Assembly: GCA_003427395.1 (NCBI GenBank)
Contig: BFEA01000031.1
Coordinates: 683,753 to 747,752 of the forward strand
Length of the DNA stretch: 64,000 nt
Reading direction: 5' to 3'
From: Chara braunii
Taxonomy: Eukaryota > Plantae > Charophyceae
Below are positions 2,843 to 37,666 of this stretch, one piece after another. Position numbers and translations under genes: made by a program. The notes under the pieces were generated by a model. The model was not told the DNA's origin, did not search any database, and was given only the letters and a program-made list of their open reading frames with translations. Positions within the stretch are counted from its first letter, which is position 1; every line of letters begins with the position of its first letter.

Positions 2843-4967
2843 NNNNNNNNNNNNNNNNNNNNNNNNNNNNNNNNNNNNNNNNNNNNNNNNNNNNNNNNNN
2901 NNNNNNNNNNNNNNNNNNNNNNNNNNNNNNNNNNNNNNNNNNNNNNNNNNNNNNNNNNNNNNNNNNNNNNNNNNNNNNNNNNNNNNNNNNNNNNNNNNNN
3001 NNNNNNNNNNNNNNNNNNNNNNNNNNNNNNNNNNNNNNNNNNNNNNNNNNNNNNNNNNNNNNNNNNNNNNNNNNNNNNNGAAACAGTTTGTCACAGCCCC
3101 TCGTTTGTTGTCCTCTTCTCCCTCTCTGCCTACGGTTTACCGGGCAGTTCTATTTGACGATATATATATATATATATATTTGTGTGTAGGATATACTAAG
3201 GGAAGGACCCCACAGAACGGCGACAAACGGTTTTGGAAGTCTTCGACTTCCAGCTGACTGCCCACCGCCAACGAAGATGATGAAACAGAGGGGACCCCAC
3301 CGCCACCGCGAAATGTTGCTTTTGGGTCGGCAACGGCTACCCAAAAAGTAAATTTCAGGGCATTTTCCCTTTTTGGGAAAGGTTGGGGCCGGGAAGGCCA
3401 TTCCAGGTCCCTTACCAGTGATTGTAATGGAAGGGCTGCCAACTTCCGTCCTCATGCGCCGGAGTACGCACCCAAGAGGTAGGTAAACGGACTGAGTATT
3501 GGAAAATGGGAATTTAGGGCCACGTAGGAATAAAGGGGCAGTGGACCGAGTGAAAAGGGTTGCCCGTCGTCTTCCACAATGGGAATTTTGGTCTGTGGGG
3601 TCGGGGAAGTTGCCTCTCGCCTTCTGAAACTGTTTGCCGCCGTCCTGTGGGGTCCTACCCCAAGTTTGCAGCCAAGAGGATGCACTATACCCGGTTGCAT
3701 TTTTGGCGCGCAGCGGGTTTCCCGATCAGGAAATATCGACGAGCTTTTTGGGGTTTAAAGCGGTGTAGAGGGGGCGGGAATATGAAGCAGAAGGGTGCAG
3801 TCGTTGTCATAAGACCGATCGGTCATTTAGGCGGTCACAGTAGAGGCAAAAACCGAACGACCAGCGGTAGCCTGCAAAGGTCATGCAGCGGTCGTTTTGG
3901 ACGGTGTCGAGTGCATCGGTTCCCCAGGGGGACCCTCCCGGCCGCGCCACACAAGATTTCGTGCAGGATTTTCTTACCGCGATGCAATGGAGCTTTTGCC
4001 GCCGCTCCGGCCAAGTGCGCCAGCCATACCTCTCGCGAACCTCTATGACAGGATAGGGCTATGTGGGGTACAACTTACCTCCGCCAAAGGGGTTGTCACC
4101 ACCCTTGAACGGGCGTATCCCAGCCGAGTTACCGAACCACGTATGAAAGCTAATCAGTTGCAATCGCAGAGGTGGCCCAGCCGATGGCGTTTCTTATACA
4201 CTTTAGCATAGGGGGTATGCGTGGTCTCACGCCTCTATCGGACCCATACGTGAATCTAAGCACTAGGGGGTTGAAATCCCAAGCATGACTCGTCATCGGT
4301 CGACTAGGATACATCCTTCTTACCACACGTTACATCATGCCAAAGCAAAAAGTCAAATTATTCACACAAAACAAAACACTACTACTCTCTTTAGTATCAA
4401 ACCCATAATCTTTTGATATGAAAATTGGTTAGGCGTCGCGCGTGGGACTTAAGATAAAACCATACAAACCCCGGACTTTCTCATATCGACTAGCCATGCA
4501 TGAATACGCAAACAGTCATAGTAATGGATACCTATGTAGTACCCATAATCGCGTGGCCCTCAATGGTCTTGAAGGTCGCGTTTGTTACGGCTGACACGCA
4601 CCTTGAGGCGTTAATCTCTCAACACTAGACAACCACCAAGGCAGTTGAGAGACTTACCCTCTTCTGCACCCTGCGGAAAGTGGGTGGTAGACAGGTTCAT
4701 ACCTCTTTGTGGCGACCAACATTTATGGTCTTGGAGACGAGTTCCATCGTCCAGGGCCTTGAGAGAAGTCAAGGGGTTTGACTTTGACGGATACCATGGA
4801 CATCAACGTCCAACTATAAAAACTTAAAAAAACGAAAGTAAAAAGAGGGATCTCTTTTTTTTCTCCACACAGTCCGTTCGATCCTTACGTACGGTAGCAG
4901 TAGACCGCGCATATATATATATCATCAAATAGAACTGCCCGGTAAACCGTAGGCAGAGAGGGAGAAG

Positions 4968-5001
<34 letters not shown>

Positions 5002-5614
5002 ATTGGGTTATAATATATGAGGCGATCACTTCTCACAATCACGGTATGACTTTCTTCAAAACTATATATATATATATTCGCGGACAAGTCAAATCCAGAG
5101 TCTCCGCCACAATCTTACCTGCAATCACATCAAAGATTCAACTGAATGTCCACGCACTACACGGGTTCAACTTCAACCACTCTCTGCGCTCATACCCCTT
5201 GCTTTAGCGATACAAGCCTGGACGATTGTCCAACCTCCCATAATAAATACTCAGTATTTTTGTTAAATGACCATTCAATAAAGTCTGAGTGAAAACTCAA
5301 TAAAATAATTCAAATCACCAAGTTAAAACCTTTAGGTTGAGTGACAAGAGTGAATTAGAATTGAGTCGTAAACCGACGAATCGACAACCGACCTATTATC
5401 GCACATAACAGAAGATGATCCTCGTGGGATGAAGCTGAAAGTGGTCTAATCCTGAATCGAAATGTTCAACGAGGACCTGTAACAAAGGACAAGTCAATGC
5501 TCAAGGCTAGACTATAAGTGTATGGAGAATGAACCCCCATATCACATTCTCACTCAAAAGTTTCCCATAACTAAGTCTAAGTCTACCTTTAAGCAAGTGT
5601 CAAAGGAAAGGAAG

Positions 5615-6185
5615 ATTTTTGGCAACATTTTCTCTATATAGGTTGGATCGCCGAAATTTATCGCAACGCTTTCTATAGGAAAAATACATTTTCATAATTT
5701 ATATTTGTTCAAATATAAAAACCGACATGGTCCTCAACTCTAAAAAGTCAAATTTTGTTTAACTCCCCGAATTAGTAAAAAATTGGGCAGCATCTCCTTT
5801 AGAGAAGTAGACTTCTCATATTTATACTAAGTCAAATAAGAACTCGGAATAAGATTGGAGTTCTTACTAAAAAAAAGTTTAACCAACTCCTTAGATTTGT
5901 AAAAATTCAGCAACACTTCCTGTAGAGAAGTGTCAATCCAGAATTTATACAAAATTAAATATAAAATATGAAAAATAATTATGACTTCCCAAAGTCAAAT
6001 TTTATCTAACTCCTTGAATTAACAAAAAATCGGACAACACTTCCCCTAGAAAGGAAAACTTCTCAAATTTTTACTAAACCAGATATAAAACTAAGATAAA
6101 ATTGAACTTTGAAAAATCAAAATTTGGTTAACTACTTGGTTTTATAGAAATTTCGGCAGTGCTTCCCGTAGGGAAAATAACTTTC
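5615..6185. repeat. Degenerate tandem array with core (c)ggcaacacttcccgtagrgaaa
   Basis: About six units at ~5620, 5662, 5786, 5907, 6031 and 6154. Three inverted counterparts (ttttcctacgggaagcgctgccgaaattt) at ~28300-28500. Confidence 0.65.
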
Positions 6186-6498
6186 CAAAATTTATACAGA
6201 ACCAAGTAAAAAAAACGATCTCCGAAAATGCGAGAACTTGAACTAAGTAAAATAAACTTAATTTAAAAAATAAAAAAATTGAATCAATTCTTACAGCTCT
6301 AACACGTGGCGAGCAATTAAAGAAACTACCTATCAAACTGAACTCAGACTAAGTAGGGTTCACACTCAACCAAATGCAAGTCCATACTACAATGAGTAAT
6401 TACTCTCACCAAACCCTAGTCATTTTTCATAAAGAACAGTTAATGGAACCTTCAAATGATTTATATTTTTTTCCCCAGCTTACATAGGGCATAAAACT

Positions 6499-7272
6499 AG
6501 ACCATTCAACTTAAAAACAAAGTCTAGCTTTGTCATTGAATATACACAAACAGAGGGCACTGCTACTTTTATAATCTTTCGACATACGACTTACCTATTC
6601 AACTTAGAAACAAAGTCTAGTCGCCCTGGACTGTTTACATAGTCAAGTTTATATATATTTTATCTGCTCTTTGTTTTTTAAGGTAGCATTCAACTGCACC
6701 ATTCAACTTAGAAATAAAGTTTAACCTGCCCCGTCTTACGACCAATTATTATTCTTAGTTAAATACTATCTTCATTATGATAAGTTATAGCCAGACCATT
6801 CAACTTAGAAACAAAGTCTGACTAGCTTGTTCATAAAGTATAATAATAATAGAATATATATAGAACTATTCCTTACTTTCAATATGTACGTGGCTCCCAA
6901 CCAAACCATTCAACTTAGAAACAAAGTCTGGTCCTTCACATGATCTCCCTCAAAATAAACAAAAGGTAGTTTCAACCATTCAACATAGAAACAAAACTCA
7001 AATCTCATTTTTCAGAAACAATAAAGAAAGATGAGGAGGTTGTGTCATTTAACTTAAAAACAAACCCAATCTCACTTAGAAAATTTCAAAGTAAACCAAA
7101 GCGACAAAACCATTTAACTTCGAAACAAAACTTAGTCCCTAAAAATGCAACCGCAGACAACCCTCGCAAGTCAGAGCAACAAGACCATCTAACTTAGGAA
7201 AAAAATCCGGTTCTCCAAGCAGTCAAAATAAAACATAGTACTGGGTCTTTCAACTTAGAAAAACAAAGTCTA
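6499..7272 (-). repeat. Repeat-spacer array: ~27-bp ACCATTCAACTTAGAAACAAAGTCT units with unrelated spacers
   Basis: About ten units at ~6499, 6593, 6698, 6793, 6904, 6974, 7045, 7108, 7182 and 7245. On the minus strand a unit reads agactttgTTTC-TAAGTT-GAAtggtct, a hairpin. Confidence 0.85.
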
Positions 7273-8999
7273 ACCTTTGGTTGACCCAGTCAATCACAAG
7301 GAGAACCACCTTTCTCCCGACTTCCCCCAATTCAAACCCTTCTTCAATCTGAATTCTGACAAACAAAAAAAATAAAACTGCGATTGCGCATGCATTCCTT
7401 TACTGAACTTTGATTTAAGTCTGGAAAGTTAAACATAAGATAAATAGGGATGCCGGCAATGCCATCGGATAAACGATAGAAAACTGTATAGGTAAGGGTT
7501 TTAAATGGGTTTATAAGAGGAGATGAAGATTACCACTCAGTTCTATTCCTTTAAAACCTCGCCTGGGTTCCTGTAGAGCTCCCACAATTGGTGGGACAAC
7601 CTCCCACAGAGGCTTTGGCACGGATTACGGGTTGCAATCCCGCCTGTCGCCTTCCTCTCCAACCCAATAGACCAGACTTAGAATAAGAGGGCCCAAAGGA
7701 CTTGGAGAATCTTTAAGTCGCTCAGATATGAGAGAGGTGCACTCAGACTCGCGTGAGAGAGCCTTGAACTCTTGGATCGCCTGAGGGCCTCGCAATGACC
7801 GCCTAAATGCGAAGCAGCTTGGTCAACCGAAGTCAAAACACCAACTGTTGACTCCTTGACGATCCTCCAATTCGCAAAAAATACCCCTCTCTCAAAGAAC
7901 TCAGTTCCTCCGTAGAGCTTTGTGGTCTGAATCGCGATGGCTACAGGTAAGTTTGCAAGCTCGTAACTCTTCTTCCACTACTCCGCACGACGGGACGAAT
8001 GACACATCGACCAACAACCAAGTCTGCCTCTCACAACTGACTTGTTGCTCCTTCAACCCACATGGTAAGCAGCGTGTCAGTCAACAGGTATGTCCGCGGC
8101 CTCGTAACCCGTCTCCAACTTTCTTCATTTGACCGTCAACAACGTACTGGCCAGTAGGGAAGTCTACAACTCGCGCTTGGCCTCCTCGCCTTCATCCGAT
8201 ATGTTGACAACGCTTTGGCCAAACAAGTAAGTCTTCGTTCCCGCAATCGTCTGACGCTACCTCCACTGATACGACGTGGAAGTCGAAATGAATCTTCGGT
8301 TAGAACATAGGAAGATTTCCCCCCCAACTTCCTTCTTGCACTACTATGCTCAGCGTACCGATCTGCAAAAATGGGAAGGAACCTTTCGCAAGAACGTGGT
8401 ATACACTGGTTTCCAAGCACGAGTTCCGAGAATCAAAGAGAGGGTACTTGTAGGATGAGCAAAATCGAAATGGATCGTCCCGCTATCTGCAAAATCGAAA
8501 TGCAGCTTTCGTCAGATGATGGGAAGATACATTTAACTAGCGTCCTCTGCCTCAATTGGCACACAGTCCGGCATCACACTTCGACTTTCGGTTGCACCTG
8601 ACTCGCCAATTCGACTATGAGTACTCTCCCTCTCATGTGCACGCTTATACCCTGCACTCGCACACTCTCATTCCTATGTGCGCTCGTCTCGACGAGCTCG
8701 TATGCAGCCGCCCCAACCTGATGACCGCCATATGGAAAGGAAAACAAACACCGAACTAACTACACTTGTAAAAATGAGAATGAATCTTCCGCTAGGACAC
8801 AAAAAGATGCACGTCATTCTTACTACTGTGAGTGCGCTCCACCTGATGTCTTCACCCCGTCCGTCTGTCTACGTCGTTTGTTGTTTCCGCCCCCAACGAC
8901 ACATACACGAGTTAAGAATGAAACTTCCGCTAAAACGCGAGAAGGTACATGACCTACCCCTACTCTGCTAGCGTACGGTTTGACACAATAGCTCAACTT

Positions 9000-20795: not shown

Positions 20796-22108
20796 CAACT
20801 TTTTTTTTTTTTTTTTTAATTATAAATCGCTCCATCTATTGGTGGGGAGCTGCACCTGCTGGAAAACGGGCCCAGCGTCCCTCATACATCATGGAATAAA
20901 AGTTGACTTTTTTCCCCGCTAATGAAGGGGTCAAAACATCTTCACCCTTTTTTTATTTTTATTTTTTTCCCTGCCCATCGGTAGGGCAATTGTCCTGAGT
21001 GCTGGTCATACTGAGGTAGGATAGTGGGATAGAGGGTGCTCGAGAAGTATTGACGTGAGGATGGGATGGGAGGTGGTCTCATATTCCAGGACATCCGCGG
21101 CTCACAGCTCCAGGTGATCACTGTGCACTCAGTGACTGGCCTCTACAACACCCTGGACTTCAAAAAAAAAAAAAAAAAAAAGAGGTACATCAGTTATGCA
21201 CAATGTCGGGGCTATGGGCCTTTTCAGCATGATTCCAGAGAACCCACTATCCCACGGGGCTGCTATGAATACCCATCCTTTTCCGGGTCTCCTATTCTAC
21301 TGGCCCAGCCCCCTCCTGGAAGATTGCCCTGCTTCCTATTGATTTCCGTTCCCCCTTGTGTCTATCAGGTGTTGACTACCCCAGGAGCCTGCAGCCCCCC
21401 TGTTGTTGTTAAACCCTTTTTAAAGCCTCTTCCATTATCTGGCACCCACAAAAGGGTGAAGATGTTTTAAACCACCAGTACCTGGCCCAGCTATCAAGTC
21501 CGAGCCTCGGCCGACCGGTACGCCGATCCGTGCCGAGGCTCGGACTACCGGGCGCAGGCATCCCGAACGTCGGAGTGAAAGAACGAAAAAACCGAAAAAA
21601 AAAACCGAAAAAAAAACCGAAAAAAAAAAACGAAAAAAAGTATGGCAGTGTATATTCCCACGCTATAGCGCCAGATTCATTCGATTTTGCTCATCCTATG
21701 GAGGGCGCAGTACCATGAGGCCAGCCGCGAAGAGAGAGAGAGAGAGAGAGNNNNNNNNNNNNNNNNNNNNNNNNNNNNNNNNNNNNNNNNNNNNNNNNNN
21801 NNNNNNNNNNNNNNNNNNNNNNNNNNNNNNNNNNNNNNNNNNNNNNNNNNNNNNNNNNNNNNNNNNNNNNNNNNNNNNNNNNNNNNNNNNNNNNNNNNNN
21901 NNNNNNNNNNNNNNNNNNNNNNNNNNNNNNNNNNNNNNNNNNNNNNNNNNNNNNNNNNNNNNNNNNNNNNNNNNNNNNNNNNNNNNNNNNNNNNNNNNNN
22001 NNNNNNNNNNNNNNNNNNNNNNNNNNNNNNNNNNNNNNNNNNNNNNNNNNNNNNNNNNNNNNNNNNNNNNNNNNNNNNNNNNNNNNNNNNNNNNNNNNNN
22101 NNNNNNNN

Positions 22109-22170
<62 letters not shown>

Positions 22171-23052
22171 TGGCGCGAATACCCTTACAAGGGTATCCGC
22201 CCTGGTTCTTGCAAGTGACAGGAAATAAGTTTTGTTCGACGTCGCAGTTGCGTTTTGTTCACATTGACTGAATAGGTTGACTAGAAGTAGCGAGTGTGTG
22301 GGCGCGCAGTTTTTTTAGGCACGCGTGATGATTTTTTCTCTTGATGCTATAGGGTCGGCGTGTCCGTCGACAACGTCTTTGGGCTTTGAGTAAAGCTAGG
22401 AAAAGTTTTCTTTTTATTGAGTTGACCATCCATGGTGGTGCACCTGCGTTCATACGGCATGCGCCGTTGGAAGTAGATTTGTTAGGTAGCGGCACACTTG
22501 TGCCGCGTGTGCGACGGCAGCCAAAGGGGGAAATTTACCCCTTCATACAGCAAGGGCCGGTGCGCAAGAACAGTAGGACGTGAGCGGTGGCCTCCACGCG
22601 GCATTATGGGGGCTACAATCGTGACATGCCGAGCAAGATCCGGTCCCTGGCGACATGTGCGCACGTACGGGGCATTGGGATTGGAGGAGAAGTCAAGCGG
22701 CAGCCTTAACGCTGCTGCCGCAGGCCCAAGCTGGTCACGGTTACCATTCACATACCGGGCTGCGCATTGTTTGTCTAGGCTTGGGCTTAGTCTTATTGGT
22801 TACAGTGCTAGACTTTTACCAGGCGGATCTTGGGATTGAGGCCAGCAACTAGTAATGGTGGAGCAAAGAAGCACTAGGGAGCAAACCAAGGGGTTGAGGG
22901 TTGGGACTATGCCCCTTAGTTTTGTTGGGGAGTCCGACAGCGGGCCCGATAGGCAGGACCGAGGACAAGGCTCTTCAGTGGATACACCACTGAACTGCTG
23001 AAGTACAGGCCAGTGTCCAATTGCTGCAGCCATCCTGAGGCAGCGGACCAAC

Positions 23053-23060
23053 TATTATAG
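23053..23060 (+). promoter_or_regulatory. TATA-like box upstream of the U6 copy
   Basis: tattatag begins 26 nt before U6 +1, close to the spacing of plant Pol III snRNA promoters. No convincing USE. Confidence 0.4.
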
Positions 23061-23078
23061 ATCTCCGCACGGGAAGTG

Positions 23079-23159
23079 GTCCTTCGGGACATCCGTTAAA
23101 ATTGGGATGATACAGAGAAGATTAGCATGGCCCCTGCGCAAGGATGGCATGCATATAAA
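23079..23159 (+). ncRNA. U6: U6 snRNA-derived sequence, 3'-truncated (variant or pseudogene)
   Basis: gtccttcgggacatccgttaaaattgggatgatACAGAGAagattAGCatggcccctgcgcaaggatggcatgcata matches the plant-type U6 5' stem, ACAGAGA box, AGC triad and ISL. The last ~20 nt and the oligo-T terminator are missing. Confidence 0.88.
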
Positions 23160-24239
23160 CCAGCGGGCAGACAGGCAACTCGGATTTCTGTCCTCCTCTC
23201 GGCCTCTCGCGTTGACTGTCAGTAGGTGGGAGCGCTGTAGGAGTGCCCAGGGTTCGTGAAGTAGGGAGGGGAGTTAGAGTGACCACCATGGCGCAGGCAA
23301 AAATCACGAGAGGAGAGGAGAAGGGACGAGCGGGGCTTGACTGTCACATCGCTGGGCGTCGTAAGTCCGCTGTGGCCGATTGCTGCTTTGGCAGCTAAGA
23401 GGAACGACGGGTCTGGCCGGTGGGGTGCAAATGAATGGGGGCGCCATAGAGCGCCAAGTGCATTTGATAAGGGAGATGGAGGATGGTAAACTGTGCATGG
23501 TAGAGGGAGGACTGTCTCTAGGCGCAGACCGGAAGCAGCGGGGCAGCGCAGTGAAGGCAAGGCTGGGAGCGGCGGGCTCCAGCTGTAGAAAGTTGGCAAA
23601 GAAGGGGATGAATGAACCCGGCTGGGATTCTGCGCCAGGTACAGCCAAAATAGAGATGGCGGAAGACATGGCTGAGAGCCATGGATGGGGTTGTTGCCTG
23701 ATTCTCCGCGGATTTAGGCGGGAAGAGGACCGAATAAGGGTTTTTTTGGATGGGCGAATCCAAATTTGAGGTTAGTTTTAGCTATAACTTAGTGTTATAG
23801 AAGCTAGGAGGAAAAAAAAAAAAAAAACATGCGCGGGAGATGGCGGACGGACCAAAGGAGAGAAGAGAAACGGGTGTATCTCGCCTAATTCTCAACAGAT
23901 TTGAGCAACGTAAGATTCGAGATTGGGGTTTTGTGGCATGGAGAATCTGATGGTAGCATCAGATTTAGCACTTGAGCAGTAGACAGGTCGGTATCAGTGA
24001 TGGAGGCTGCGTGTAATAGTGCCGACGACAGATGAGAAATGAACTGCGAGGGGCGGAAGGAAAGCGGGAGCTAAAAGGGTCTATCTCCCTCGTTTCTCTA
24101 TAGAATCAGGAGAAATAAGTTGCTAGGTAGGGGTTTTTCGGCATTACGAAGTGAATGGCCGCAACATATTTCGAATTTGTGCAGTGGTTGAACCAGCACA
24201 GGCAGCAAGAGCTGCGCCTATGAGGTAGATGCACTTTTA

Positions 24240-27200
24240 TGTAAAGGCGAGATGTATCTTACCGCGTTCTAGCGGAAGATTCAGTCTCATTTTGCACATT
24301 TTGTGAGTAGAATCGCGGTGCACAGATTCGGAGCTGTGTGATTCCTTGTATTCAACGGGCTCAACTTGCTGCTCGGCGTGACAAAGTCATTCCTCGTGGC
24401 CGCGGTGTTGCCCACAGTGTGCGCCCCCTGTCGAGACCATAGCCGGGGTCGTCTTCCTTGCCATCACGTTCCGGTGTTGATTCGGTATTGATGGCTCATG
24501 AGCGACTGCAATACTGCTTGCAGTCGTCCTCATCTTCGGGATCACTCGCCGGGATGACTGGCTCGTTTATGCCTGGCATATATAGAGAGAGAGAGAAAGA
24601 GAGAGAAGAAAGAGAAAGGAGATGAGTAGGATGCTTAGTACCTGGTTGGTTGAGCTGTCCAATGCATCCCGTCACCTGGACTGCACATGGCCAGGGAGAT
24701 GGTCTGTGTGCATTCATTTTTATTTTTCAACTTTGATATTAGTTTTTGTTTGTTATTATTGTTATTTATTTTTTTAAATTAAGCTTGACCGTAATATTGG
24801 TCAGATGCATTCAGGGAAGTTGGGTGTAAGGGGGGAGCCGCTCAGTTCGGGAAGCTTGACCGTAAATTAAGCATGAGCAAGGGAGAGGCAACAGATTGAA
24901 GTTCAGGGAGGAAAACGGGGGCAGTTTAAAGAGGGAAGGAGTGGAAGGAGAGCGACAGGGTCGAAGGGAGTCATACCTCTTGTTGGCAAGGTGGGCAACT
25001 GCCTCACCTCCAGGAAGACTGACTTTTCTTCGGCAAAGGGGTTGCTGCTGGCCTAGAGCTCGAGCTATAGTTACGAACTGCAGTGGACATCGCAAAGAGT
25101 GAGCCGCTGCTGTGTTTTTTTTCCCCCAGCGGCAGGCTGCTCAGCCACTGCTGCTCCTGGTCCATGGTGGCAGCCTTAGAACTGTGCATTGTTGGGTTGG
25201 CTGCGTCTGCTGCACTCCGACGAACCCTGCTGGCTGGGTCTGTCACGGATATTGCGCTCATGGCTGTTGTCACAACCTTTGCCCCAGCACATAGGCTGTG
25301 TGTGGTTGAGCCCTTGTGAAGCCGCTGCAGTGCCGCTTGGTTGTGCGCCTTTGCGGTACCGCCTCAAAGACGCTGGCCCTCGCCGTAAGCAGATTACTGT
25401 GTAAGGTACCGTTTGGGTTGGGCACTGTTGCTGTGCGGAGCACTAATTTGAGGCGCTGTTGCGGAGCAGAACGCTGTTCCTCACTGTGTACAGCAACAGC
25501 TGGGCCTAAGGGAGGACGCCGTGAGTAGGGGGGAGTGATTGGAGGCGTCTACAAGAGGCCACTGCAACAACATGGGGGCTGCCACGACGCGCAGCCGTGG
25601 TGTGCGCTGTACGTCCTTGGGCCTGCTGCGTCATGCGGTGTTTCACCAGGACTTGCTGAGGTACGGGGCTGTGGTTCGCCGTGCACCGCCGCACACTGCC
25701 TCGCAGCGCTGCCTTGCTGTGAACCCCGCCTTCTGCTCTGTTCTTTGTATACTGTGCACTCTTGCCACGCACTTGTTGAGCGCAATGCTGTCCCTCACTG
25801 TATTTTGCGTCATATACTACCTCAACGCGGTGCTGTTGCATGGAGTGTTCTGCTTACGAATGTCTTACTGAGCCTCGCTGCATATTGCTGCCCCTCGAAT
25901 AGACCACGGTCTGCTGTGAGGAAGCCTGAGTGTGGAAGCACGTACCTAGTGTAGCACGGAACTGCAGGATAGGCAGGTACTTGTGCTTCAACAGAGTAAC
26001 GTTGTTCTTACCGCAGGTGGAACTGTTGAGTTGGGGCTGCGCTGCCGTTTTCGGCATCTTGCTGTATTACATGGTACATCACTACGTTACCGTACGACCA
26101 GGCGGGGGGGGATACTGCTGCGGCTCGAGAGATAGTCAGGGGGACTGCTACTTGCGTTTCTACCATGGTTCGACCAGCTTCACTGCATTCCTTTTTGGCC
26201 ATCATTGCGGGGCCCTCCGGAGATTCAAGAGTCCAAGGTCCTCTCCCATGAGTTTGAGCGCACCACCCTTGTATCTCGAGAGCCTGAACGTTTCTACTTC
26301 TATCTTTCTCAGTCTAAGTCTAATCTAAGGTTACGAGAGGAAGGCGGCAGGCGGGATTGAAACCCGTAGGACCGCGCCAAGGCCTCTGTGGGAGGTTGCC
26401 CCACTTTTGCGGGAGCTCTGCCGGAGCCCAGGCGGGGTTCTGGAGGCAGAGAACACTCAGGTATAACCCTCGATTTATGCGTGTGATCCTATCACTAAAC
26501 TATATTATCCTATTGCTATTGACCTGACTGTAAGTATGATAACAAAAAAATAACTGTATTTCCTTGCTTGTTTGAATTCAGGACAATGATTTGCAAAGTA
26601 AACTGACAAATATGTATTGGGGTAATCAAGATTATCAGTGTGAAGTCAGAAAACACAGAGCTGTCAAATATGTTCCGGAGGCTGGGCGGACGCATAAGTT
26701 GCAGGCTGCTCAGTCTTTCGCTCTTGTTTTACTTGTTATTTGGCAAGCTAGACTACCCATAAGTTGGGTAGCCTAGTTCTACGTTGTATGTAATTGTATG
26801 GGCTGGCTAGGCGCAACATAAGTTGTTGTGCCTGGTCATATGCCTCTCGTCGTTTGTTCAGGCAAAGGCTGGGCTCCTCATGAGTTGAGGTAATCTAGTT
26901 CCTTGTGTATGCCGAAAGTTTAGGCTGACCTGTCTCACCATAAGTTGGTGGGGCCTGGTCATACGCCTTACGTCAATTGTTTAGGCAGAAGTTGACCACA
27001 CCATAAGTTGGTGTGGCTTAGTCTTATGCTTTATTGTTCCAGGCGAAACTATTCACACCATAAGTTGGTGTGGTCAAGTCATGAGCCGCCATCACTAAGA
27101 AAATCAGAGTATACAAAGTGATACATACTTATTATGTATATTCATGGCAGACTGAACGCCATAAGTTGGGAGATCCAGCCATATAAGCCGGTAGCAGACA

Positions 27201-30005
27201 AAGCAGAGGGAAAGAAGATGAACAATACAAAATGGTGGGGTAACTGTGGGCAGGCTGACTCACCCATAAGTTGGGTAGTTGGTCCAATTCCCTTGATAAC
27301 ACGAAAGCAGAGAGATATATAAAGTCTGGCTATTTTCCTTTTCTAAATATGTTTGACGTTTGGGTGGGGATCCTCATTAGTTGAGGTGACCTGGCCACTT
27401 GTCTGAAGACAAAATCTGATTGTGAAACTCATCTATTGATGTAGTTGTGTTGCGGGGGCCGGACGAATGCATAAGTTACGGGTTGTTCGGTCATTCGCGC
27501 TTGTTGTTGTTTGGGCGGGGCTAGACTACTCATAAGTTGGGTAGCCTGGTCTTATGCTATATGTCACTGTATGGGCTGGTCAGGCACAACATAAGTTGTT
27601 GTGTTTGGTCATATGCCTTTTGTTGTTGTTTAGGCAGAGGCTGACCCCTCATAAGTTAAGGAGGTTCAATTCTATGTGCATGCCGAACGTTCAGGCTGAC
27701 CAGCCTCACCATAAGTTGGTGCGGCCGGTCATACGCCTTATGTCGATCGTTTTGCAGAAACTGGTCACACCATAAGTTGGTGTGGTTTGGTCTTATGCGT
27801 ACGTATATGTATGTTACCAGACTTGGGCATTATGAGTTGGTGTGACCTAGTCATATAAATTGGCAGGTCAGTCACATCCATAAGTTGGGTTGGTTGACCC
27901 TATGTCTTATGTAAGGAAGGGTAAAAAGGGAATAATGAGGGTTTTTGAACGAACTACGTGACCTGGAAATGAACCTGAAGGTTGGTGAGAGATGTTGTTG
28001 CACTCACCTATGCATGTTTTTGAAGGTCATCTCTGGGGTATTCTCTTTGATAGAGTAGTTCTTGTAGATGCTCGCCAAGTGCTGGAGCCATAGGTAGGTA
28101 AGATGGATGATGGGAGGGAAGCTTGGGATGAGATAGGACCGACTCTGCTGAGGGTTAGGATCAACATTGGCTCATGGTCTCACTAAGAGGGCATGCAAAC
28201 TAATGTTGAGCCTAAGTTATCAAGCAGGTGTCAGAAGTTAGTCCAGGTATAATTTTGTCTTGCATTTTTGTTTTCAGTTTGTATAAATCTTGGTAGCCCA
28301 CTTTTCCTACGGGAAGCGCTGCCGAAATTTCTACAAATCTGAAAAAGTTAGTCATTTTTGGACTTGTAGAAATTCTGGGAAGGCACTTTTCCTACGGGAA
28401 GCGCTGCTGAAATTTTGCAGAATTTAGAGAGTTTGAGTATTTTCAGCCAGGAAAGATCTGGCAATCCATCCCGTTTAGGGGATATGCTGCCGAAATTTCC
28501 TGTATTTTTAGATAGATATGAGAGGTTAGTTAAAAAGGTAGGATTATTTCTTGATCACTCAAGCATGGCTTGGGTACTGGCCTGTGCTGCATTGCAGGTC
28601 ACCTTTATTCAGATTGATTCAAGGCTTGACTAGTTTCAAGCTGATCCTACAAAGATAATCTTCTGTTATCTTTTGATAACAAGTCGGTTTCCGGCCCAAC
28701 TCTAATCCACTCTTGCTACTCAACCTAAAGGCTTTAGCCCTGTGTTTTGTGTTGTTTTGTTCTATTTTCACCCGGACTTTAATTGAATGACCATTTAATA
28801 AAGACGCTGAGTATTTTATTTTGAGAGTTGCACAAAGAGTGAGATTTGTATAACTAAAGCGAGGGGTGTGAGCGCAAAGAATGGTTGAAGTTGACCCCGT
28901 GTAGTGTGTGCTCTGTTGATGTGAATTTTTTATGTGATTACAGGTATGTTCTGTGAATTGAAGTCCAGACTTGGTTCTGCGTATGATCATATGTGTATAT
29001 ATATATATTCAAAGGAAACCACACCGTGATTGTGAGAGTGATCGTCTCTTATCTCATAACTTTTATATCATATCTTCTTATGTTCGCACGACCCGTTGAG
29101 GCCGCGCATAGTGATTAAGTAAGAGCTGCACTGAGAGAAAAGAGAGGTCCCTGCTTAATTCTTGCTTTTTAGAGTTATTAGGGTTGGACGTTGTAGTCCG
29201 TGGCAGCCGTCAAAGTCAAACCCCTTGATATTTGATCGCCACGACAGCTTAGAGCTGTCTACTCAACCCCTCTGCACAGGGTGCAGAAGAGGGTGTGGTC
29301 TTCAACCGCACATGACGGTTATCTGGCGTCGAGAGATTACCCCTCAAAGCTCCTCTCAGCTGACACTTGAGCGTCGAACGTGACCCTCGAGAATATCAAG
29401 GGCCGCGAGGCTATGAGTACCACATAGTACCCCACCAGCACAAATGGTTGTGTATGTCCGCATGGCTGGTTGATATGAGGAGGCCATGCGCTCGCCCGAC
29501 ACTTATACGGGAACCCAGCGCGCGATACTTATCTGATTCTTGCTGCATAAAGTTATGGGTCGGATACTGAAGGGAGTAGGAGTGTTGTAGTGTTGTGGTG
29601 TTGTGGTGTTGTTTATGATACTTGTTTTGTGTGTGTCTATGTGTTATGTGTGGGTAGATGTGAGTGTTGTGGTGTAACGCGGGGTGTGTGCGATGCGTTC
29701 TGGTCGACCGACGCCGAGTCGCGTTTGGGACGTCAGCCCCCCAGAACGTTGACTCGCGTGCGGGTTCTATTTTGGGCGTTCGACCGCGCGTACCCCCTAT
29801 GCTACAGCGAACGAGAAACGCCCTCGGTTGGGCCACCTCTGCAATTGCATACGAAAAGCCTTCGCATGTGGTTCAGTAGCTCGGCGGGGATACGCCCACC
29901 TAAGGGATGGTGACAGCTCCCGCAGGTGGAGGTAAGCGGTGCCTCGCGTGACCCTGTCCTGTCGTAGGGGCTCGCGAGAGGTACGGCTGGCGCACTCGGC
30001 CGGAG
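24240..30005 (+). mobile_element. Unclassified large non-coding repeat element, copy B
   Basis: Colinear inverted homology with 4005-8960. It runs into a gap at 30006, and the left boundary may extend to the (AG)n at 22167. Confidence 0.7.
26680..27900 (+). repeat. Array of ~18 hairpins with loop core CA-TAAGT-TG and variable stems
   Basis: Examples: ctagactaccca-taagt-tgggtagcctag; ggctaggcgcaaca-taagt-tgttgtgcctggtc; ccacacca-taagt-tggtgtgg. Spacing mostly ~60 nt. Units 1-7 are re-duplicated about 780 bp downstream. Confidence 0.9.
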
Positions 30006-30934
30006 NNNNNNNNNNNNNNNNNNNNNNNNNNNNNNNNNNNNNNNNNNNNNNNNNNNNNNNNNNNNNNNNNNNNNNNNNNNNNNNNNNNNNNNNNNNNNNN
30101 NNNNNNNNNNNNNNNNNNNNNNNNNNNNNNNNNNNNNNNNNNNNNNNNNNNNNNNNNNNNNNNNNNNNNNNNNNNNNNNNNNNNNNNNNNNNNNNNNNNN
30201 NNNNNNNNNNNNNNNNNNNNNNNNNNNNNNNNNNNNNNNNNNNNNNNNNNNNNNNNNNNNNNNNNNNNNNNNNNNNNNNNNNNNNNNNNNNNNNNNNNNN
30301 NNNNNNNNNNNNNNNNNNNNNNNNNNNNNNNNNNNNNNNNNNNNNNNNNNNNNNNAACTTTTTGTCCGTTCGTTTTTTTTTTTCGTTTGTGTATTTGTTT
30401 TTTTTTTTTCCTTTTTTTTTTTTTTTGTTTTCTCAAGTGTGTCGTTCCTAGGTAAGTGGAGCCCGGCCTTCGCGCAGCGACCGGGCCTTCCCTTGAACGA
30501 CCCCCCTAGGGCTGCGGCGCGTATACGGGAGTGCCTGCGGCCCATAGCTGAGCGAGGTACTGGTGGTTTAAATTAAACCCACGGTGTCGAACGGGAACTT
30601 TGGACGCGAGGCCCAGACAATCTACTACAGGCCTCAAGAGACTATGGACCCTAGGTTCAGACAGGGTAGCACCCACTGTAGCAGTCTTACCGTCCTTCCC
30701 CTAGCTTACCCAAGGCCAGGCGGAACTCGAACTGGCCTGAGCGACTTATGTCCCTACCTTACCCTAGGGTCTAAGCCTTACATATAGCGACCAGACAGTT
30801 CTATCCGAATGTCAGTAGGAACCACACCCAGTGGCACCCTATCCAACCTACCTGAACGTACTGCAGATACCAGACCCCACCCAGTGACTAGACCCCCCCA
30901 GCCTGATATTATAGTGGTATGTATGCACCCACCC

Positions 30935-31342
30935 GGAAACTTGTGTATATAGCCCGTAGGCAATGTGTAGTTCGCAAGCTATGTGTATACCCGAAGGCTG
31001 TATCTGCTCTGTAAATCTATGTATCGAGATGTACAGACAGCATCATGTGTGGAAACTTGTGTATATAGCCCGTGGGCAATGTGCAGTCCGCAAGCTATGT
31101 GTACGCCCAAAGGCTGTGTGTGCTCTGTGATGCAGGCAATGTGTAGTTCGCAAGCTATGTGTATACCCGAAGGCTGTATCTGCTCTGTAAATCTATGTAT
31201 TGAGATGTACAGACAGCATCATGTGTGGAAACTTGTGTATGTAGCCCGTAGGCAATGTGTAGTTCGCAAGCTATGTGTATGCCCGGAGGCTGTGTGTGCT
31301 CTGTGAACCTATGCATCGAGATGTACGGACTGCATCATGTGT
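30935..31342. repeat. Tandem repeat, ~115-bp unit, ~3.5 copies
   Basis: ggaaacttgtgtatatagcccgtaggcaatgtgtagttcgcaagctatgtgtatacccgaaggctg recurs. Confidence 0.9.
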
Positions 31343-31394
31343 GTATATTGTGGAGAGAACGGGGCAAGCTGGACAAGGACCCCCCTCCCAGGTC

Positions 31395-31458
31395 CGAGCC
31401 AAGCTCGAACCCGTGACCTTGTAACATGTAATCAAATGACTCTGCCGTATGAACAACT
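31395..31458 (-). other. Degenerate tRNA-like segment (possible SINE head)
   Basis: Minus strand gttgttcatacggcagag...aaggtcacgGGTTCGAGCttgg has a B-box and T-arm-like context with a degenerate A-box. Confidence 0.4.
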
Positions 31459-31611: not shown

Positions 31612-31741
31612 ACCATGCGTCAGCCCAAGGGGGTGTGTGTCCAGCCGTGAGTCAATCTAACGCCCTGCCTGTGTCCATGCGTTAGCCCAAGGGGGTGTGT
31701 GTCCAGCCGTGAGTCAATCTAACGCCCTGCCTGTGTCCATG
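31612..31741. repeat. Two ~64-bp tandem units
   Basis: ccatgcgtyagcccaagggggtgtgtgtccagccgtgagtcaatctaacgccctgcctgtgt occurs twice. Confidence 0.9.
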
Positions 31742-31803: not shown

Positions 31804-32600
31804 AACTGGTCAGGGACGCTGGACCCGGTTTCCAGCAGGTGCCGCTCCCCACCAATAGATGGAGCTGCCCGGCAGCCAAGGCCTCAATTCTGGTGGTTCT
31901 CTCACCACCACCGGGATAGTGGCCTTGCATAAGGGCTTCTTTCTCAAAAAAACAAAAAAACAAACAAAAAAAAGGAACGAGGCAACAAATGACAGAAGGA
32001 GAGGAAAGAAAAGCAACCACGGTAACCGTTGCCGTGGGAGGGCACCAGACTACCACTGCCCAGAACAGATGACACAGTCGTGGGCAACTTTTTGAATTTC
32101 AAAAAGGGAGGAAAAGCACACTGTGGCAATTATTACAGCCAACTTCTTCTTTCTTTTTTTTTTTCTCAGCCAAGATTTTGAAACAACTTCTTGTCTTGAT
32201 TTCAACTCTTTCCAAAACAGATGTTGAGCTCTTCTTTCAGATCATCATGAGCAGGGCCTTTCGGGTGGAGCCAATCCTTTTTGACATAAGGGTATGGTCT
32301 TCATAAAGCACCTGAAAGCGTGTGTCAGCAGCTGAAAGCTTGTCTACGTCAGCAGCTGCTTTCCTGTTCGTTTTTTTTGTTTCTTGTTTTATGTTTTAAA
32401 TTTAGAACAGCCCAAGCGGCTGCTAGGGGTGCTAATACAAGCACGCACCACTAGCACTCTTAGGGAGGCTCCATCTATTGGTGGGGAGTAGCACCTGCTG
32501 GACATCGGGTCCCGTTCTTTTTTTTTTTTTTTTTTTTTTTNNNNNNNNNNNNNNNNNNNNNNNNNNNNNNNNNNNNNNNNNNNNNNNNNNNNNNNNNNNN

Positions 32601-35600
32601 TTTTTTTTTGAAACAACCCGAAGCTGTGATAGAGGTGCTTATAAGAGCAGACACGTCTACCACAGTCGGGGAGGCTCCATCTATTGGTGGGGAGCTGCAC
32701 CTGCTGGAAACCGGGTCCAGCGTCCCTAAACATCGTGTTCCCTGTTGTACACAGACCAAATGAAACGGGCAGCAGTAGCAGGATGACCCAACCCTGATGG
32801 AGACAAATCATGAGTAAGGCCACACATCTACTCTACCTCCTTAGCCACTTGCCCACCGGACATTTGTATATTCGGGTGGTCGTGGCCCAAGTGTAGTGAC
32901 CACTATCACCATTTCTGCTCATAAGGGTGACCGTAGCCCGAATGTAGTGAACACTATCTCCGTTTCTGCTCACGAAGCTAAGTCAAAACCTCTGTGTATG
33001 AACCGCCCTGTGTGTAGGCAAAATGACCCCCATTCCCCAACCCCCACCCTCTAGAACAGTAAGTTTTGGTCCGTGTTAAAGGCTTTCAGTGCGTTGTGAG
33101 CGATATGAGACAGTATCAGTTATATATGGAGAAGCCGTTACAGGTTGCAGTCAGCCGTATTTTGAGTCTGTCCCAGGCTGTCGGGATGTGGTCCGCTCTG
33201 CATTCTGTAAACAATCCCTCCTGGGTAACCCCTAACCCCTAAACCCTTAAGACCGCGGCAGGTCCTATTTCCACAGCTGATGGCAATACTTACATTGTGT
33301 AACTTGCAAACAATGGTTCTTGAACCGGGACGCAAATTGTAGGCCCTCTCACCCCTAACCTCTAAACCTGCAAACCATGGAGATCACCGTAGTGCCTGTT
33401 ATCTCAGATGACAGAAGTCCGTTGATTGTGCAAGCAGCCTGTCTTGTTGTGTTGATCCCCTGACCCCAACCTGAGGCGGCTCCCTGGTCTGCGACTGCTG
33501 TTGCTCGTCGTCCAATGGGTCCGTTCATTGTGCAACCGGCCTGTGTTGTCGTGTTGATCCCCTGACCCCATCCTGAGGCGGGTCCCTGGTCTGTGATTGC
33601 TGTTGCGATTGCTGTCACTCCTCGTCCGCTGATCCGACGTACCCGGGTCACGTAGTTGCCCCCTCCTTTTACTGTATTTCCGAGAGATATGGGGGCGGTA
33701 GCAGTGCGGGATCGGGAGCAGGGCAAGGAGATGTGGGGTGGGGGTCTACGGGATGAGCAGGAAGCTGGTCGGGAGGAAGGGGACCGCAAAATCTTTCAGG
33801 GGTTTCCTCTGCCAGACTAGCTCCCCAGCTCTCCAATGCTTCCATTGTATGCTGAGATCGTGTTGCAATGCAGAGAAGAGACGGTGGGGGTCTTGCCATA
33901 TCTGGCAATACGATTCCCTGATAGCCTCCCTGAGAGTGGCATCCTTCTCTTCGTGATACTCCCGTGTCATGGTCTTCCAGGCATTGTGGGTATGGGATCT
34001 GATCTCGTACTTTATTTCCTGTTGCGGTCTCTGCAATCCAAACTGGTAGTCTTTTCTCTCGTAGGAGCACCGTGCCCTCCATGTTTGCATGAGGACATGA
34101 AAACTCGTATGTGAGAAGAGATTAACCCCAAACGGAGACCAGTTTGCTAGCAACTGTTGATTTTCGCCAAGGAGAATGAGGCCAAGATCCCACGGTATGT
34201 GATGGTCCGTCAAGGAGTGAAACGCTGCATCCCACCACCTCCAGATTTGAGCAGCCATCGGGCAAGACAGAAGGCAGTGCTCAAGGGTTGCCCTAGCAGG
34301 CTGAGAAGCCCGACCGCAGTACGTGCATATAGGGGACAACAGTCCTTTTTGCTCCAGGTTAGTTCTGGAAACAATCCAATCTGGGGTGGGGAGACAGCGA
34401 TGTAAGATTTGCCATTGCAGGGACCTAAGGCTTGTGGGCATGAGTTTAGCATATTTGGCCCAGGGAAGGGTGCTCAGCAACTGTGCATCAAGTGGTGAGT
34501 CGCGTTCCCATCTATGCACGATCGTTTTCCCAATCTGCTGCTGAGGCCGGGCTGCCTTATACCCTCCTCTGACCGTGTAGTCCCAGATATGCAGGTNNNN
34601 NNNNNNNNNNNNNNNNNNNNNNNNNNNNNNNNNNNNNNNNNNNNNNNNNNNNNNNNNNNNNNNNNNNNNNNNNNNNNNNNNNNNNNNNNNNNNNNNNNNN
34701 NNNNNNNNNNNNNNNNNNNNNNNNNNNNNNNNNNNNNNNNNNNNNNNNNNNNNNNNNNNNNNNNNNNNNNNNNNNNNNNNNNNNNNNNNNNNNNNNNNNN
34801 NNNNNNNNNNNNNNNNNNNNNNNNNNNNNNNNNNNNNNNNNNNNNNAGTCCCAGATATGCAGGTTGTGTTGGCCCTTCCATTCCCATTCGTCCGGGTCGA
34901 ATGGGAGCAGGGCCACGGGTATGGATGGCTCATACACCTGGAATCCTTTGTCGTGGTCCCCCACGACTCTGATATTTATCAATCCGACCCATGATTCTGT
35001 AACGTCGGAGTCCGCATCCCCGTTTAGGCGGAAGAGCCGCTTACCCGGCATATGTAGAGCAAAGGCATCCAGTGTGCAGCTCGCACCATTTCTGTTGCAG
35101 ACTCTGTAGACTTTGTCCGGTTGTGGGAGGTCAGCATATCTGACTACCCAGTCTTGCGGTTCAATCGTCGGACCTGTTTTGAGAGTTTGCAGCCAGGCCA
35201 GTGACAGTGCATCGGTGAGCTAGCGAGTCTTTTCTTCAATATTCCAGACATATTTTAGCTTAGCCCTCAGGACATCCGGTGAGAGCCATTTCTGTTCGAC
35301 CAGATCCCAGAGGTCACCCATCGTATAAATCCCTTTTTTTGCCTAGACCAGCCACGACGAGTTGGCTGTGAGCACAAAGGGGGACCCATCTTCATTCAAG
35401 ATAAAGGGGTTTCCGAAGAGTGGCTGCCGCCACACATTATGCCACCTGTTGGGTGCTCGCTTTTGCTTGGGGCCAGTCGTTCTCCATAGCTTAATCATGG
35501 TCGGCCAGAGAGGGTCATCGTGAATGTCCTGCCTGATGGCACGTGATGCAGCCCCGGCTTGTGTCTGTCGGCGAGGGCTCGGGAGTGACCAATGGTTATT

Positions 35601-37095: not shown

Positions 37096-37568
37096 AAGAT
37101 AACTTGACAGTTGAAACAGTCCTTGCAGGATTATTATTATTATTATTATTACTATTATGCCCTAAAGGCTAAATTCCTTTTGGCATAACAAGTGGACCAG
37201 CCGCAGCAAAGGAGGATCACAAAAACATTTTGCAAAATACCCCAGACATTGGTTGGACCCCATCTCTGCAATGTACCTCTACCAGACACCATCCAACTTT
37301 GCAAAATGCCCCTGGAGTTGCGAACTTTTTGTAGGTGCAATTGCAAAAGCCCAGGGCGTAAACGGGGAGGCTGAGATTGCAAATTTGCACACCTGCCTGA
37401 CAGGGCCACAACACAAAGATGCCAGGCATTGTCAGCCCAAAAGGCCATTCCACTGTGCCCAGATCTTTCAGGGACATTTTGACATATATCTCAACGTATG
37501 GGGGCATTTGGCAAATTATCCCCCCCCAAAAAGGGTGGACTCTCTACCCCCCCCCCAAAAAAAAAGGT

Positions 37569-37570
<2 letters not shown>

Positions 37571-37666
<96 letters not shown>

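What the first reader, a model, noticed from the sequence alone, without database searches (positions are those of the whole stretch)
26680..27900. Array of ~18 hairpins with variable stems but a near-invariant UAAGU loop
Seen: the core CA-TAAGT-TG recurs mostly every ~60 nt. The arms differ between units (actaccca/tgggtagc, gcgcaaca/tgttgtgc, ccacacca/tggtgtgg, cctca/tgagg) but stay complementary. Several imperfect pairs are G-T on the + strand (three in the ~26805 unit), which would be G-U wobbles in a + strand RNA and A-C mismatches on the other strand. Inference: structure rather than sequence is conserved, as expected for a multivalent protein-binding scaffold, a packaging signal or a polycistronic small-RNA precursor. 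A plain satellite would not behave this way. I do not recognise it as a described family.
Basis: partly seen in the sequence, partly recalled or inferred. Interest (0 to 1): 0.9.

Follow-up and report, generated by a model that had tools for sequence, protein, structure and literature searches.

The report
Fixed-loop RNA hairpin array in retroelement repeat
A 4-kb mobile repeat with LTR-like ends carries a row of 18 small hairpins that all show the same five-letter loop on differing but still-paired stems; selection has kept this fold on one strand, most likely as a multi-site docking strip on the element's RNA, but its partner and function are untested.

Summary
There are 18 hairpins at 26667-27912, all on the + strand. 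Each has a UAAGU loop closed by C-A/U-G on a two-tier stem of about 17 bp, mostly 57-65 nt apart. Pairing and covariation far exceed shuffled and slid controls. No Rfam family matches.

New here:
- A second copy in a public contig (L061, 78% identical) holds the same 18 units in the same order.
- With an inverted, diverged sister copy in this window, it defines a unit of about 4,045 bp. The unit starts TG, ends CA and has unrelated flanks, so it looks like an LTR.
- Between the two copies, loops (3.7% changed) and upper stems (9.9%) are far better kept than spacers and non-array parts of the unit (about 21%).
- Stem changes are biased to G-U over A-C (38 to 12), although transitions elsewhere in the unit are strand-symmetric. 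This points to selection on a + strand single strand.

Loops are the best-kept part and stems are too short, which argues against a microRNA-like precursor.

Best reading: a multi-site, loop-presenting docking platform on the element's RNA (packaging, export or stability).

The scan has already noted this kind of array many times on other DNA of this genome, which those notes call Chara braunii; I did not verify the species.

The parts
26116..30005 (+). LTR-like repeat unit holding the array. It starts TGCTGCG at 26116 (boundary good to about +/-10 nt). Its last ~120 nt are lost in the assembly gap 30006-30355. The full length in the second copy, L061, is about 4,045 bp and ends ..GCA.
   Evidence: L061 1847-5891 matches window 26110-30000 at 78% identity, and the inverted sister matches too. 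The flanks of all three copies are unrelated. N runs.
26104..26111 (+). Run of 8 G (polypurine-tract-like) 4 nt upstream of the unit's start. A similar GAGAGAGGGG precedes the sister copy, but nothing like it precedes L061.
   Evidence: Read directly from the sequence; its meaning is uncertain.
26330..26465 (+). Best-conserved block upstream of the array (72-84% identical even to the sister).
26530..26537 (+). GTAAGTAT, a perfect 5' splice-site / U1-complementary octamer. It is the only GTAAGT on the + strand of the unit and is conserved in L061, not in the sister.
26667..27087 (+). Hairpin units 1-7, period about 60 nt.
   Evidence: Model hits; folds.
27137..27409 (+). Hairpin units 8-10, spaced about 100-110 nt apart. 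A conserved TATATAAA lies at 27316-27323 between units 9 and 10.
27444..27912 (+). Hairpin units 11-18. Units 11-17 are an old duplicate of units 1-7 (79% identity). The duplication is also present in L061, so it predates the split of the two copies.
28282..28288 (+). TATAAAT conserved in all three copies: a candidate promoter TATA box of the unit.
   Evidence: Inference only.
28797..28802 (+). The only AATAAA on the + strand of the unit, inside a block conserved in all three copies (the sister has AACAAA): a candidate poly(A) signal.
   Evidence: Inference only.
3873..7882 (-). Inverted, diverged sister copy of the same unit (62-75% identity outside the array).
6502..7265 (-). Sister array at the equivalent position: 10 decayed units with a constant core of about 19 nt that contains UAAGUU. 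The outer stems vary, and the sense strand is T-rich.
   Evidence: (two weak model hits).

Best explanation
The array is a selected cis-acting structure on the + (sense) strand RNA of a retroelement's long-terminal-repeat-like unit. Eighteen hairpins of about 46 nt, joined by U/G-rich linkers of about 14 nt, each present the same pentaloop U(A/G/U)AGU closed by A-U and C-G. The most likely mechanism is a multivalent docking platform: many copies of one loop-specific binder, either the element's own capsid/nucleocapsid protein or a host RNA-binding protein, load side by side and mark the element's RNA for packaging, export or stabilisation. The stems differ between units because only pairing and the loop are needed. 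Diversified stems would also limit mispairing between units and loss of repeats during reverse transcription. Shown here: the hairpins, their covariation, stronger conservation of loop and upper stem, the + strand bias, and the location in a mobile TG...CA repeat. Inferred: that the strand is RNA, that a binder exists, and the function.
For: Eighteen model hits lie on one strand only. Covariation and pairing are far above shuffled and slid controls, and RNAalifold finds the helices independently. A second copy, L061, has the same 18 units in the same order. Divergence between the two copies is 3/80 in loops, 19/192 in upper stems, 46/252 in middle stems and 69/322 in spacers, against 21.6% in the non-array parts of the unit; loop and upper stem each give p about 1e-5. 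The array is 82-93% identical between copies, while the rest of the unit is mostly 65-90%. Stem differences are WC<->G-T 38 and WC<->A-C 12. Polarised transitions in the non-array parts are nearly strand-symmetric (C>T .194, G>A .168, A>G .150, T>C .145), giving p = 0.0016. The + orientation also fits the G-run just upstream and the order TATAAAT then AATAAA on the + strand. The sister copy keeps an array with the UAAGUU core at the same place. Several stem-loops that share a loop motif on unlike stems are how packaging signals of ssRNA viruses are described (PMC5699041, PMC7612645, PMC3593212).
Against: No candidate binder is encoded in the window, and nothing was found in Pfam for ORFs near the unit. 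Fold z-scores do not separate the strands (block A: -6.4 on + against -3.7 on -; block B: -3.9 against -4.3). G-T pairs are also tolerated in single-stranded DNA. Only one fully compensatory WC-to-WC change separates the two copies; the covariation comes from old divergence among units. If the TATAAAT at 28282 is the promoter, the array lies in U3, where tandem repeats usually act as DNA enhancers. LTR status is incomplete: no partner LTR, no primer-binding site, and an imperfect target-site duplication.
Confidence: 0.55

Rival explanations
1. DNA-level regulatory repeats. The array lies in the U3-like part of the unit, upstream of the conserved TATAAAT, and acts as an enhancer or chromatin element, like the tandem repeats in many LTR U3 regions. 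In this reading the hairpin potential is secondary.
For: The array ends about 370 nt upstream of a TATAAAT conserved in all three copies. A single AATAAA follows 515 nt later, which would place the array in U3. Tandem U3 repeats acting as enhancers are established for retroviruses and plant elements (own knowledge).
Against: A protein site on duplex DNA does not need arms that covary to stay complementary while differing between units. Strand-biased G-T tolerance has no meaning for duplex DNA. U3 is still present in the 3' part of the full-length RNA, so a U3 location does not exclude an RNA role.
Confidence: 0.1
2. Another RNA-level or single-strand role without a dedicated loop binder. Examples are a structured block that slows exonucleases or the silencing machinery, or a fold needed in reverse-transcription intermediates.
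For: The same structural evidence as for the best explanation; none of it identifies a binder.
Against: A purely structural block would not need an invariant loop, yet the loop is the most constrained part (3.7% against 21% divergence).
Confidence: 0.13
3. Polycistronic precursor of small RNAs (microRNA-like or short-hairpin-like).
For: There are regularly spaced hairpins on one strand, and each arm is about 20 nt long.
Against: Conservation is the reverse of that in microRNA hairpins: the loop is best kept and no arm sequence is shared among units. The stem is about 17 bp with an internal loop, which leaves no room for a 21-nt duplex plus a lower stem. No Rfam microRNA family matches.
Confidence: 0.06
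4. Decoys that mimic a 5' splice site. Each loop shows AUAAGU, which is the consensus GUAAGU without the essential first G. Eighteen such sites behind one perfect GTAAGTAT would recruit or hold U1 snRNP, suppressing premature polyadenylation or retaining the RNA.
For: UAAGU is complementary to positions 3-7 of the U1 snRNA 5' end (own knowledge). A conserved perfect GTAAGTAT lies 137 nt upstream of the array in the window and in L061.
Against: Only 5 nt match, and they sit in a tight pentaloop that would hinder pairing. Selection maintains the stems. Earlier scan notes, which I did not check, report sister subfamilies with quite different constant loops, which does not fit an invariant host RNA partner. 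A chance match of a pentamer to the U1 end is not rare once several loop types are allowed.
Confidence: 0.04
5. Non-functional by-product. The palindromic units are made and homogenised by a DNA-level process such as snap-back synthesis or conversion between arms, and they decay neutrally afterwards.
For: This copy carries many mismatches (39 other, 20 A-C and 46 G-T out of 299 pair cells). The sister array is heavily decayed. So the individual copies look dead.
Against: Loop and upper stem are conserved between copies well above the neutral level of the same unit. The wobble tolerance is strand-biased. Unit-specific stems stay in the same order in both copies.
Confidence: 0.08

Closest known systems
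Multiple packaging signals of ssRNA viruses (STNV, HBV pregenome, enteroviruses, MS2-type phages)
   Same: Several stem-loops share a short loop motif on stems of unlike sequence. Each binds one coat or core protein, and together they give specific, cooperative packaging (PMC5699041, PMC7612645, PMC3593212, PMC7793301).
   Different: In those viruses the signals are dispersed, degenerate and overlap coding sequence. Here 18 sit head to tail at a fixed period in a non-coding terminal repeat of a genomic mobile element, and no binder is known.
Engineered MS2 / PP7 / boxB hairpin arrays for RNA tethering and imaging
   Same: Tandem hairpins with a constant recognition loop, joined by linkers, load many copies of one protein. 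Later versions deliberately vary stems and linkers so that the array survives recombination and reverse transcription (own knowledge, not checked here).
   Different: Those arrays are artificial. The loop and stem geometry here (a pentaloop on a two-tier 17-bp stem with a 1x4 internal loop) matches none of them.
Xist A-repeat and similar repeat modules of long non-coding RNAs
   Same: A natural row of about 8 short hairpin-forming repeats separated by U-rich linkers serves as a multivalent protein platform (own knowledge).
   Different: The A-repeat units are conserved in sequence rather than covarying, and they belong to a host gene, not a mobile element.
Retroviral and retrotransposon cis-acting RNA elements (psi packaging signals, constitutive transport elements, direct repeats of avian retroviruses)
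   Same: Structured, non-coding, sense-strand elements near the ends of the genomic RNA that bind Gag or export factors (own knowledge).
   Different: Those consist of one to a few distinct stem-loops, not an 18-fold array with one loop.
Tandem enhancer repeats in LTR U3 regions
   Same: Position in the 5' half of an LTR-like unit, upstream of a TATA box.
   Different: Enhancer repeats conserve sequence, not complementarity, and show no strand-specific wobble pattern.

Membership tests
microRNA / small-RNA hairpin cluster | A stem long enough for a duplex of about 21 nt plus a lower stem | tested here: not met
   The consensus stem is 17 bp in two tiers with an internal loop.
microRNA / small-RNA hairpin cluster | Arms (the mature sequence) conserved more than the loop | tested here: not met
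   Loop divergence is 3.7% against 10-18% in the stems. Upper-stem sequences differ among units.
microRNA / small-RNA hairpin cluster | Discrete small RNAs mapping to the arms | not testable with these tools
LTR of an LTR retrotransposon | Defined ends 5'-TG...CA-3' shared by copies whose flanks are unrelated | tested here: met
   The unit starts TGCTGCG at window 26116 and L061 1847 (the sister has the diverged TTTTGCG). It ends ..GCA in L061 (5891) and the sister. Flanks differ in all three copies.
LTR of an LTR retrotransposon | Target-site duplication of 4-6 bp | tested here: inconclusive
   L061 has GCTAA on the left and GGTAA on the right (4 of 5). The sister is unclear. The window's 3' end is in an assembly gap.
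LTR of an LTR retrotransposon | Two direct copies flanking an internal region with a primer-binding site, polypurine tract and gag/pol | tested here: inconclusive
   There is no direct partner copy in the window and no PBS-like sequence after L061's end. A G-run precedes the window copy and the sister copy. The nearby ORFs with reverse transcriptase are LINE-type and lie on the other strand.
Rfam families (any of 4227) | A score at or above the gathering threshold | tested here: not met
   Only a U6 hit at 23079-23180. Nothing on the array even at E up to 10.
CRISPR array | Constant repeats, unique spacers, a prokaryotic host with cas genes | tested here: not met
   In this array the stems vary and only the loop is constant. 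The context is eukaryotic: U6 snRNA, LINE elements and microsatellites. The pattern is absent from 185,579 prokaryotic genomes.
Packaging-signal arrays (PS-mediated assembly) | Multiple stem-loops sharing a loop motif on variable stems | tested here: met
Packaging-signal arrays (PS-mediated assembly) | Sequence-specific binding of the loop by the cognate capsid protein | not testable with these tools
   No capsid or gag gene is linked to the unit in the window or in L061.

The most novel reading that the evidence does not exclude
The array is a natural counterpart of an MS2-type tag. Each retroelement subfamily would carry its own loop 'code', read by its own Gag or nucleocapsid protein, so that each lineage packages only its own RNA. 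The stems would be diversified under selection so that the 18-fold repeat survives reverse transcription. The sister copy, with a different constant core at the same site, would be another allele of that code.
Probability: 0.3. Interest if true: 0.8.

Novelty: new variant of a known kind. Interest (0 to 1): 0.62.

Why it matters
If the loops are read by a protein, this would be a natural multivalent RNA tag of a form not described in Rfam or in the papers I could search. It would offer a tractable model for how a retroelement marks its own RNA. It could also yield a new orthogonal hairpin-protein pair for RNA tethering. The design principle is notable in itself: a constant loop on deliberately unlike stems is the solution engineers reached for stable hairpin arrays. 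The evidence here also gives a testable strand and a defined 4-kb unit, so RACE, SHAPE and pull-down experiments can be designed directly.

Tried and rejected
The message said to go on with other tools, so I later used short loop patterns from the array in DNA pattern scans. I state this openly because the reason for the decline is unknown.

2. A scan of viral contigs for three loops 45-65 nt apart gave 60 loci. They are a 27-nt coding tandem repeat in phage contigs, and none matches the hairpin model. They are unrelated.

3. The more specific pattern is absent from viral contigs and from prokaryotic genomes.

4. Two protein searches found nothing. The query ORFs were 29414-29836 (-) inside the unit and 35343-36386 (-) in a LINE. 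My threshold of 1e-10 in the second search was too strict. I therefore could not fetch further copies by protein, and I could not confirm the species myself.

5. The G-T excess within the window does not work as a strand test, because base composition explains it.

6. Fold energy does not work as a strand test either. The + strand is more stable in 13 of 18 units and by about 47 kcal/mol per block, but shuffles of the G/U-rich strand also fold better, so the z-scores are similar.

7. The contrast in transition/transversion ratio between stems (61:19) and array spacers (26:43) looked striking. However, the non-array parts of the unit give 268:114, which is not different from the stems (p = 0.34), and the spacer alignment is unreliable. 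I dropped this argument.

8. No + strand site of 7 nt or more complementary to the loop exists in 22109-30005, so I found no support for an intramolecular kissing partner.

9. No tRNA genes were found, and the bacterial-type promoter/terminator scan was uninformative.

10. No paper describing such arrays turned up in the literature searches. The accession prefix of L061 appears in no paper.
Full report
**What is there.** Positions 26667-27912 hold 18 hairpin units, all on the + strand.
- The core CATAAGTTG (up to 1 mismatch) occurs 18 times in 26693-27887. The whole 64-kb window has 28 such matches against 13.8 +/- 3.6 in shuffles.
- Seventeen of the 18 are loops. One (26986) is a chance match in a spacer. 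One further unit (about 27832) has the loop UGAGU.
- Folding each unit gives one hairpin: a five-base loop U(A/G/U)AGU closed by A-U and C-G, an upper helix of about 6 bp, a middle helix of about 8 bp, a small asymmetric internal loop, and a 3-bp GGC/GCC foot.
- A covariance model of this structure finds the 18 units (E 9e-15 to 0.011). Elsewhere in the window it finds only two weak hits, both inside the sister array described below.
- Rfam has nothing for the array, even at E up to 10.

**Is it more than chance?**
- On the 18 units, 78% of pair cells form standard pairs, against 31-45% when partners are slid by 1-3 columns. The covariation score is 0.445 against 0.09-0.17, and no shuffle out of 500 reaches either value.
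- With 33 units from two copies the figures are 81% against 28-45% and 0.462 against 0.09-0.17.
- RNAalifold on its own recovers the upper and middle helices.
- The strongest covariation is in the upper helix. One pair, for example, reads A-U 13, C-G 12 and U-G 6.
- The units are not 18 independent samples. Units 1-7 (26671-27029) reappear as units 11-17 (27448-27798) at 79% identity. Between these two blocks the loops changed at 1 of 30 sites, stems at 46 of 203 and spacers at 38 of 124.

**A second copy, and the element.**
- A pattern scan of the metagenome collection returned one contig, L061 (BFBZ01003173.1, 7,932 bp). L061 1847-5891 matches window 26110-30000 at 78% identity. It carries the same 18 units in the same order, including the block duplication.
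- The window also holds an inverted, more diverged sister copy at about 3873-7882 on the - strand. It is 62-75% identical outside the array.
- The three copies become alignable at the same point: TGCTGCG at window 26116 and at L061 1847. L061 and the sister stop being alignable at ..GCA. Beyond those points the flanks are unrelated.
- The window copy runs into an assembly gap (N run 30006-30355).
- The array therefore belongs to a mobile unit of about 4,045 bp with TG...CA ends, which is the form of a long terminal repeat.
- The rest of the LTR definition is not met or unclear. There is no partner copy in direct orientation in the window. No primer-binding site follows L061's end. The candidate target duplication is imperfect (GCTAA / GGTAA).
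- A run of eight G lies just upstream of the window copy, and a purine tract lies upstream of the sister.
- The ORFs nearby that carry reverse transcriptase are LINE-type and lie on the other strand. ORFs inside and beside the unit match nothing in Pfam.

**Selection, and on which strand.** I compared 16 orthologous unit pairs between the window and L061.
- Sites changed: loop 3/80 (3.7%), upper stem 19/192 (9.9%), middle stem 46/252 (18%), foot 15/96 (16%), spacers and internal loops 69/322 (21%).
- The non-array parts of the same unit differ at 21.6%. Loop and upper stem are each below that level with p about 1e-5.
- Along the unit, the array is 82-93% identical between the two copies, while the rest is mostly 65-90% identical.
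It is not decisive there, because the + strand is G/T-rich throughout the unit and that predicts about 65% G-T.
- Fold energies do not settle it either. Block A gives z = -6.4 on + and -3.7 on -. Block B gives -3.9 and -4.3.
- A calibrated test does work. Using the sister as outgroup, transitions in the non-array parts are nearly strand-symmetric: C>T .194, G>A .168, A>G .150 and T>C .145 per site. A Watson-Crick pair should therefore decay to G-T about 54% of the time. Between the two copies the stems show WC<->G-T 38 times and WC<->A-C 12 times (76%, p = 0.0016).
- The constraint therefore acted on the + strand as a single strand. RNA is the natural candidate, although single-stranded DNA also tolerates G-T.
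- The + orientation agrees with the upstream G-run and with the order of the conserved + strand signals listed next.

**Position inside the unit.** The conserved + strand signals are few.
- GTAAGTAT at 26530-26537, present in the window and L061.
- TATATAAA at 27316-27323, between hairpins 9 and 10, present in all three copies.
- TATAAAT at 28282-28288, present in all three copies.
- The only AATAAA, at 28797-28802, inside a block conserved in all three copies (the sister has AACAAA there).
- If TATAAAT and AATAAA are the promoter and poly(A) signal, the array lies in U3. It would then be carried in the 3' part of the full-length RNA.
- If transcription starts at the inner TATA or upstream of the array, some or all hairpins lie in R.

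**What it most likely does.**
- The loop is the most constrained part, the stems need only pair, and the units are evenly spaced by U/G-rich linkers. This is what a row of identical docking sites presented on hairpins would look like.
- The closest described mechanism is the set of multiple packaging signals of ssRNA viruses. There, several stem-loops share a loop motif on unlike stems, and each binds one capsid protein (PMC5699041, PMC7612645, PMC3593212, PMC7793301).
- Engineered MS2, PP7 and boxB arrays work the same way. From my own knowledge, their later versions vary the stems to avoid recombination. That would also explain why a reverse-transcribing element keeps 18 unlike stems.
- I put 0.55 on a multivalent RNA docking platform for packaging, export or stability. 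I put about 0.85 on the narrower claim that this is a selected + strand fold in a mobile repeat.

**Rivals.**
- Small-RNA precursor cluster: unlikely. The conservation pattern is the reverse of that in microRNA hairpins, no arm sequence is shared, and the stem is only about 17 bp.
- DNA-level U3 enhancer: this explains neither the covarying arms nor the strand-biased wobble.
- 5' splice-site mimic: AUAAGU in every loop sits behind one perfect GTAAGTAT, which is intriguing. However, it rests on 5 nt in a tight loop. Earlier scan notes, which I did not check, report sister subfamilies with unrelated loops, and that would not fit.
- Neutral palindromes made by a DNA process: this does not fit the loop and upper-stem conservation.
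- This particular copy, and even more the sister array, look like decaying insertions. The selection inferred here acted in the active lineage, not at this locus.

**Relation to earlier notes of this scan.**
- The scan has already recorded this kind of array many times on other DNA of the same genome. Those notes call the genome Chara braunii and place the arrays in retrotransposon terminal repeats.
- I could not confirm the species with my own tools. I can only say the context is eukaryotic: a U6 snRNA, LINE elements and microsatellites.
- My results agree with those notes on the hairpins and on the mobile-repeat context.
- They add four things: a calibrated strand test, the gradient of constraint from loop to spacer, exact ends of the unit, and candidate promoter and poly(A) signals.
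- They differ on size. Some notes report terminal repeats of more than 8 kb, whereas this family's unit is about 4 kb with sharp ends in three copies.

**Novelty.** No Rfam family matches, and none of my five literature searches for such arrays found a description. The general kind, a repeated hairpin platform on an RNA or multiple packaging signals, is known. I therefore rate this a new variant of a known kind. Function and binder are untested.

Noticed in passing
window 23079-23180 (+): U6 snRNA match (Rfam 73 bits, full model length). Its 3' part diverges after AAGGATG and it has no T-run terminator. A TATA-like ATTATAG lies about 25 nt upstream. It is 3 kb upstream of the repeat unit and co-oriented with it. 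It may be a pseudogene or a captured copy.
   Followed up: partly
window ~28303-28330 and ~28387-28416 (+); a third, degenerate copy at ~28470-28500: A small repeated module: a UUCC-UACG-GGAA hairpin (UNCG-type tetraloop) followed by GCUGCCGAAAUUU. It is kept in the window, in L061 and in the otherwise poorly conserved sister copy. The first copy begins about 15 nt after the conserved TATAAAT.
   Followed up: no
window 26530-26537 (+): A perfect GTAAGTAT (5' splice-site consensus), the only GTAAGT on the + strand of the unit. It is conserved in L061 and lies 137 nt upstream of the first hairpin. The hairpin loops read AUAAGU, which is the same hexamer without the first G.
   Followed up: partly
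window 54016-55283 and 60888-62063 (+): A pair of direct repeats, 92-95% identical and about 6.87 kb apart: a candidate LTR or pseudo-LTR pair of another element.
   Followed up: no
window 33746-47250 (-); also 15242-16421 (+) and 52221-53127 (-): Several LINE-type ORFs (AP endonuclease, reverse transcriptase, zf-RVT), interrupted by many N and assembly gaps.
   Followed up: partly
window 2843-3079, 21751-22108, 30006-30355, 32541-32600, 34597-34846, 40103-40877, 48017-48247: Assembly gaps (runs of N). The piece with the array is bounded by gaps at 22108 and 30006. Several of the 'ORFs' and 'repeats' reported by the mechanical tools are artefacts of these gaps.
   Followed up: yes
L005 1095-1700 and 59 other IMG/VR loci: Phage contigs carry a 27-nt coding tandem repeat containing GCATAAGTTGC. 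It matches the loop string by chance and has no hairpin-array structure.
   Followed up: yes
window 30958-31422, 31613-31741, 32874-32972, 33417-33606: Several tandem repeats with periods of 51-176 nt lie just beyond the gap that follows the unit. Their nature is unknown.
   Followed up: no
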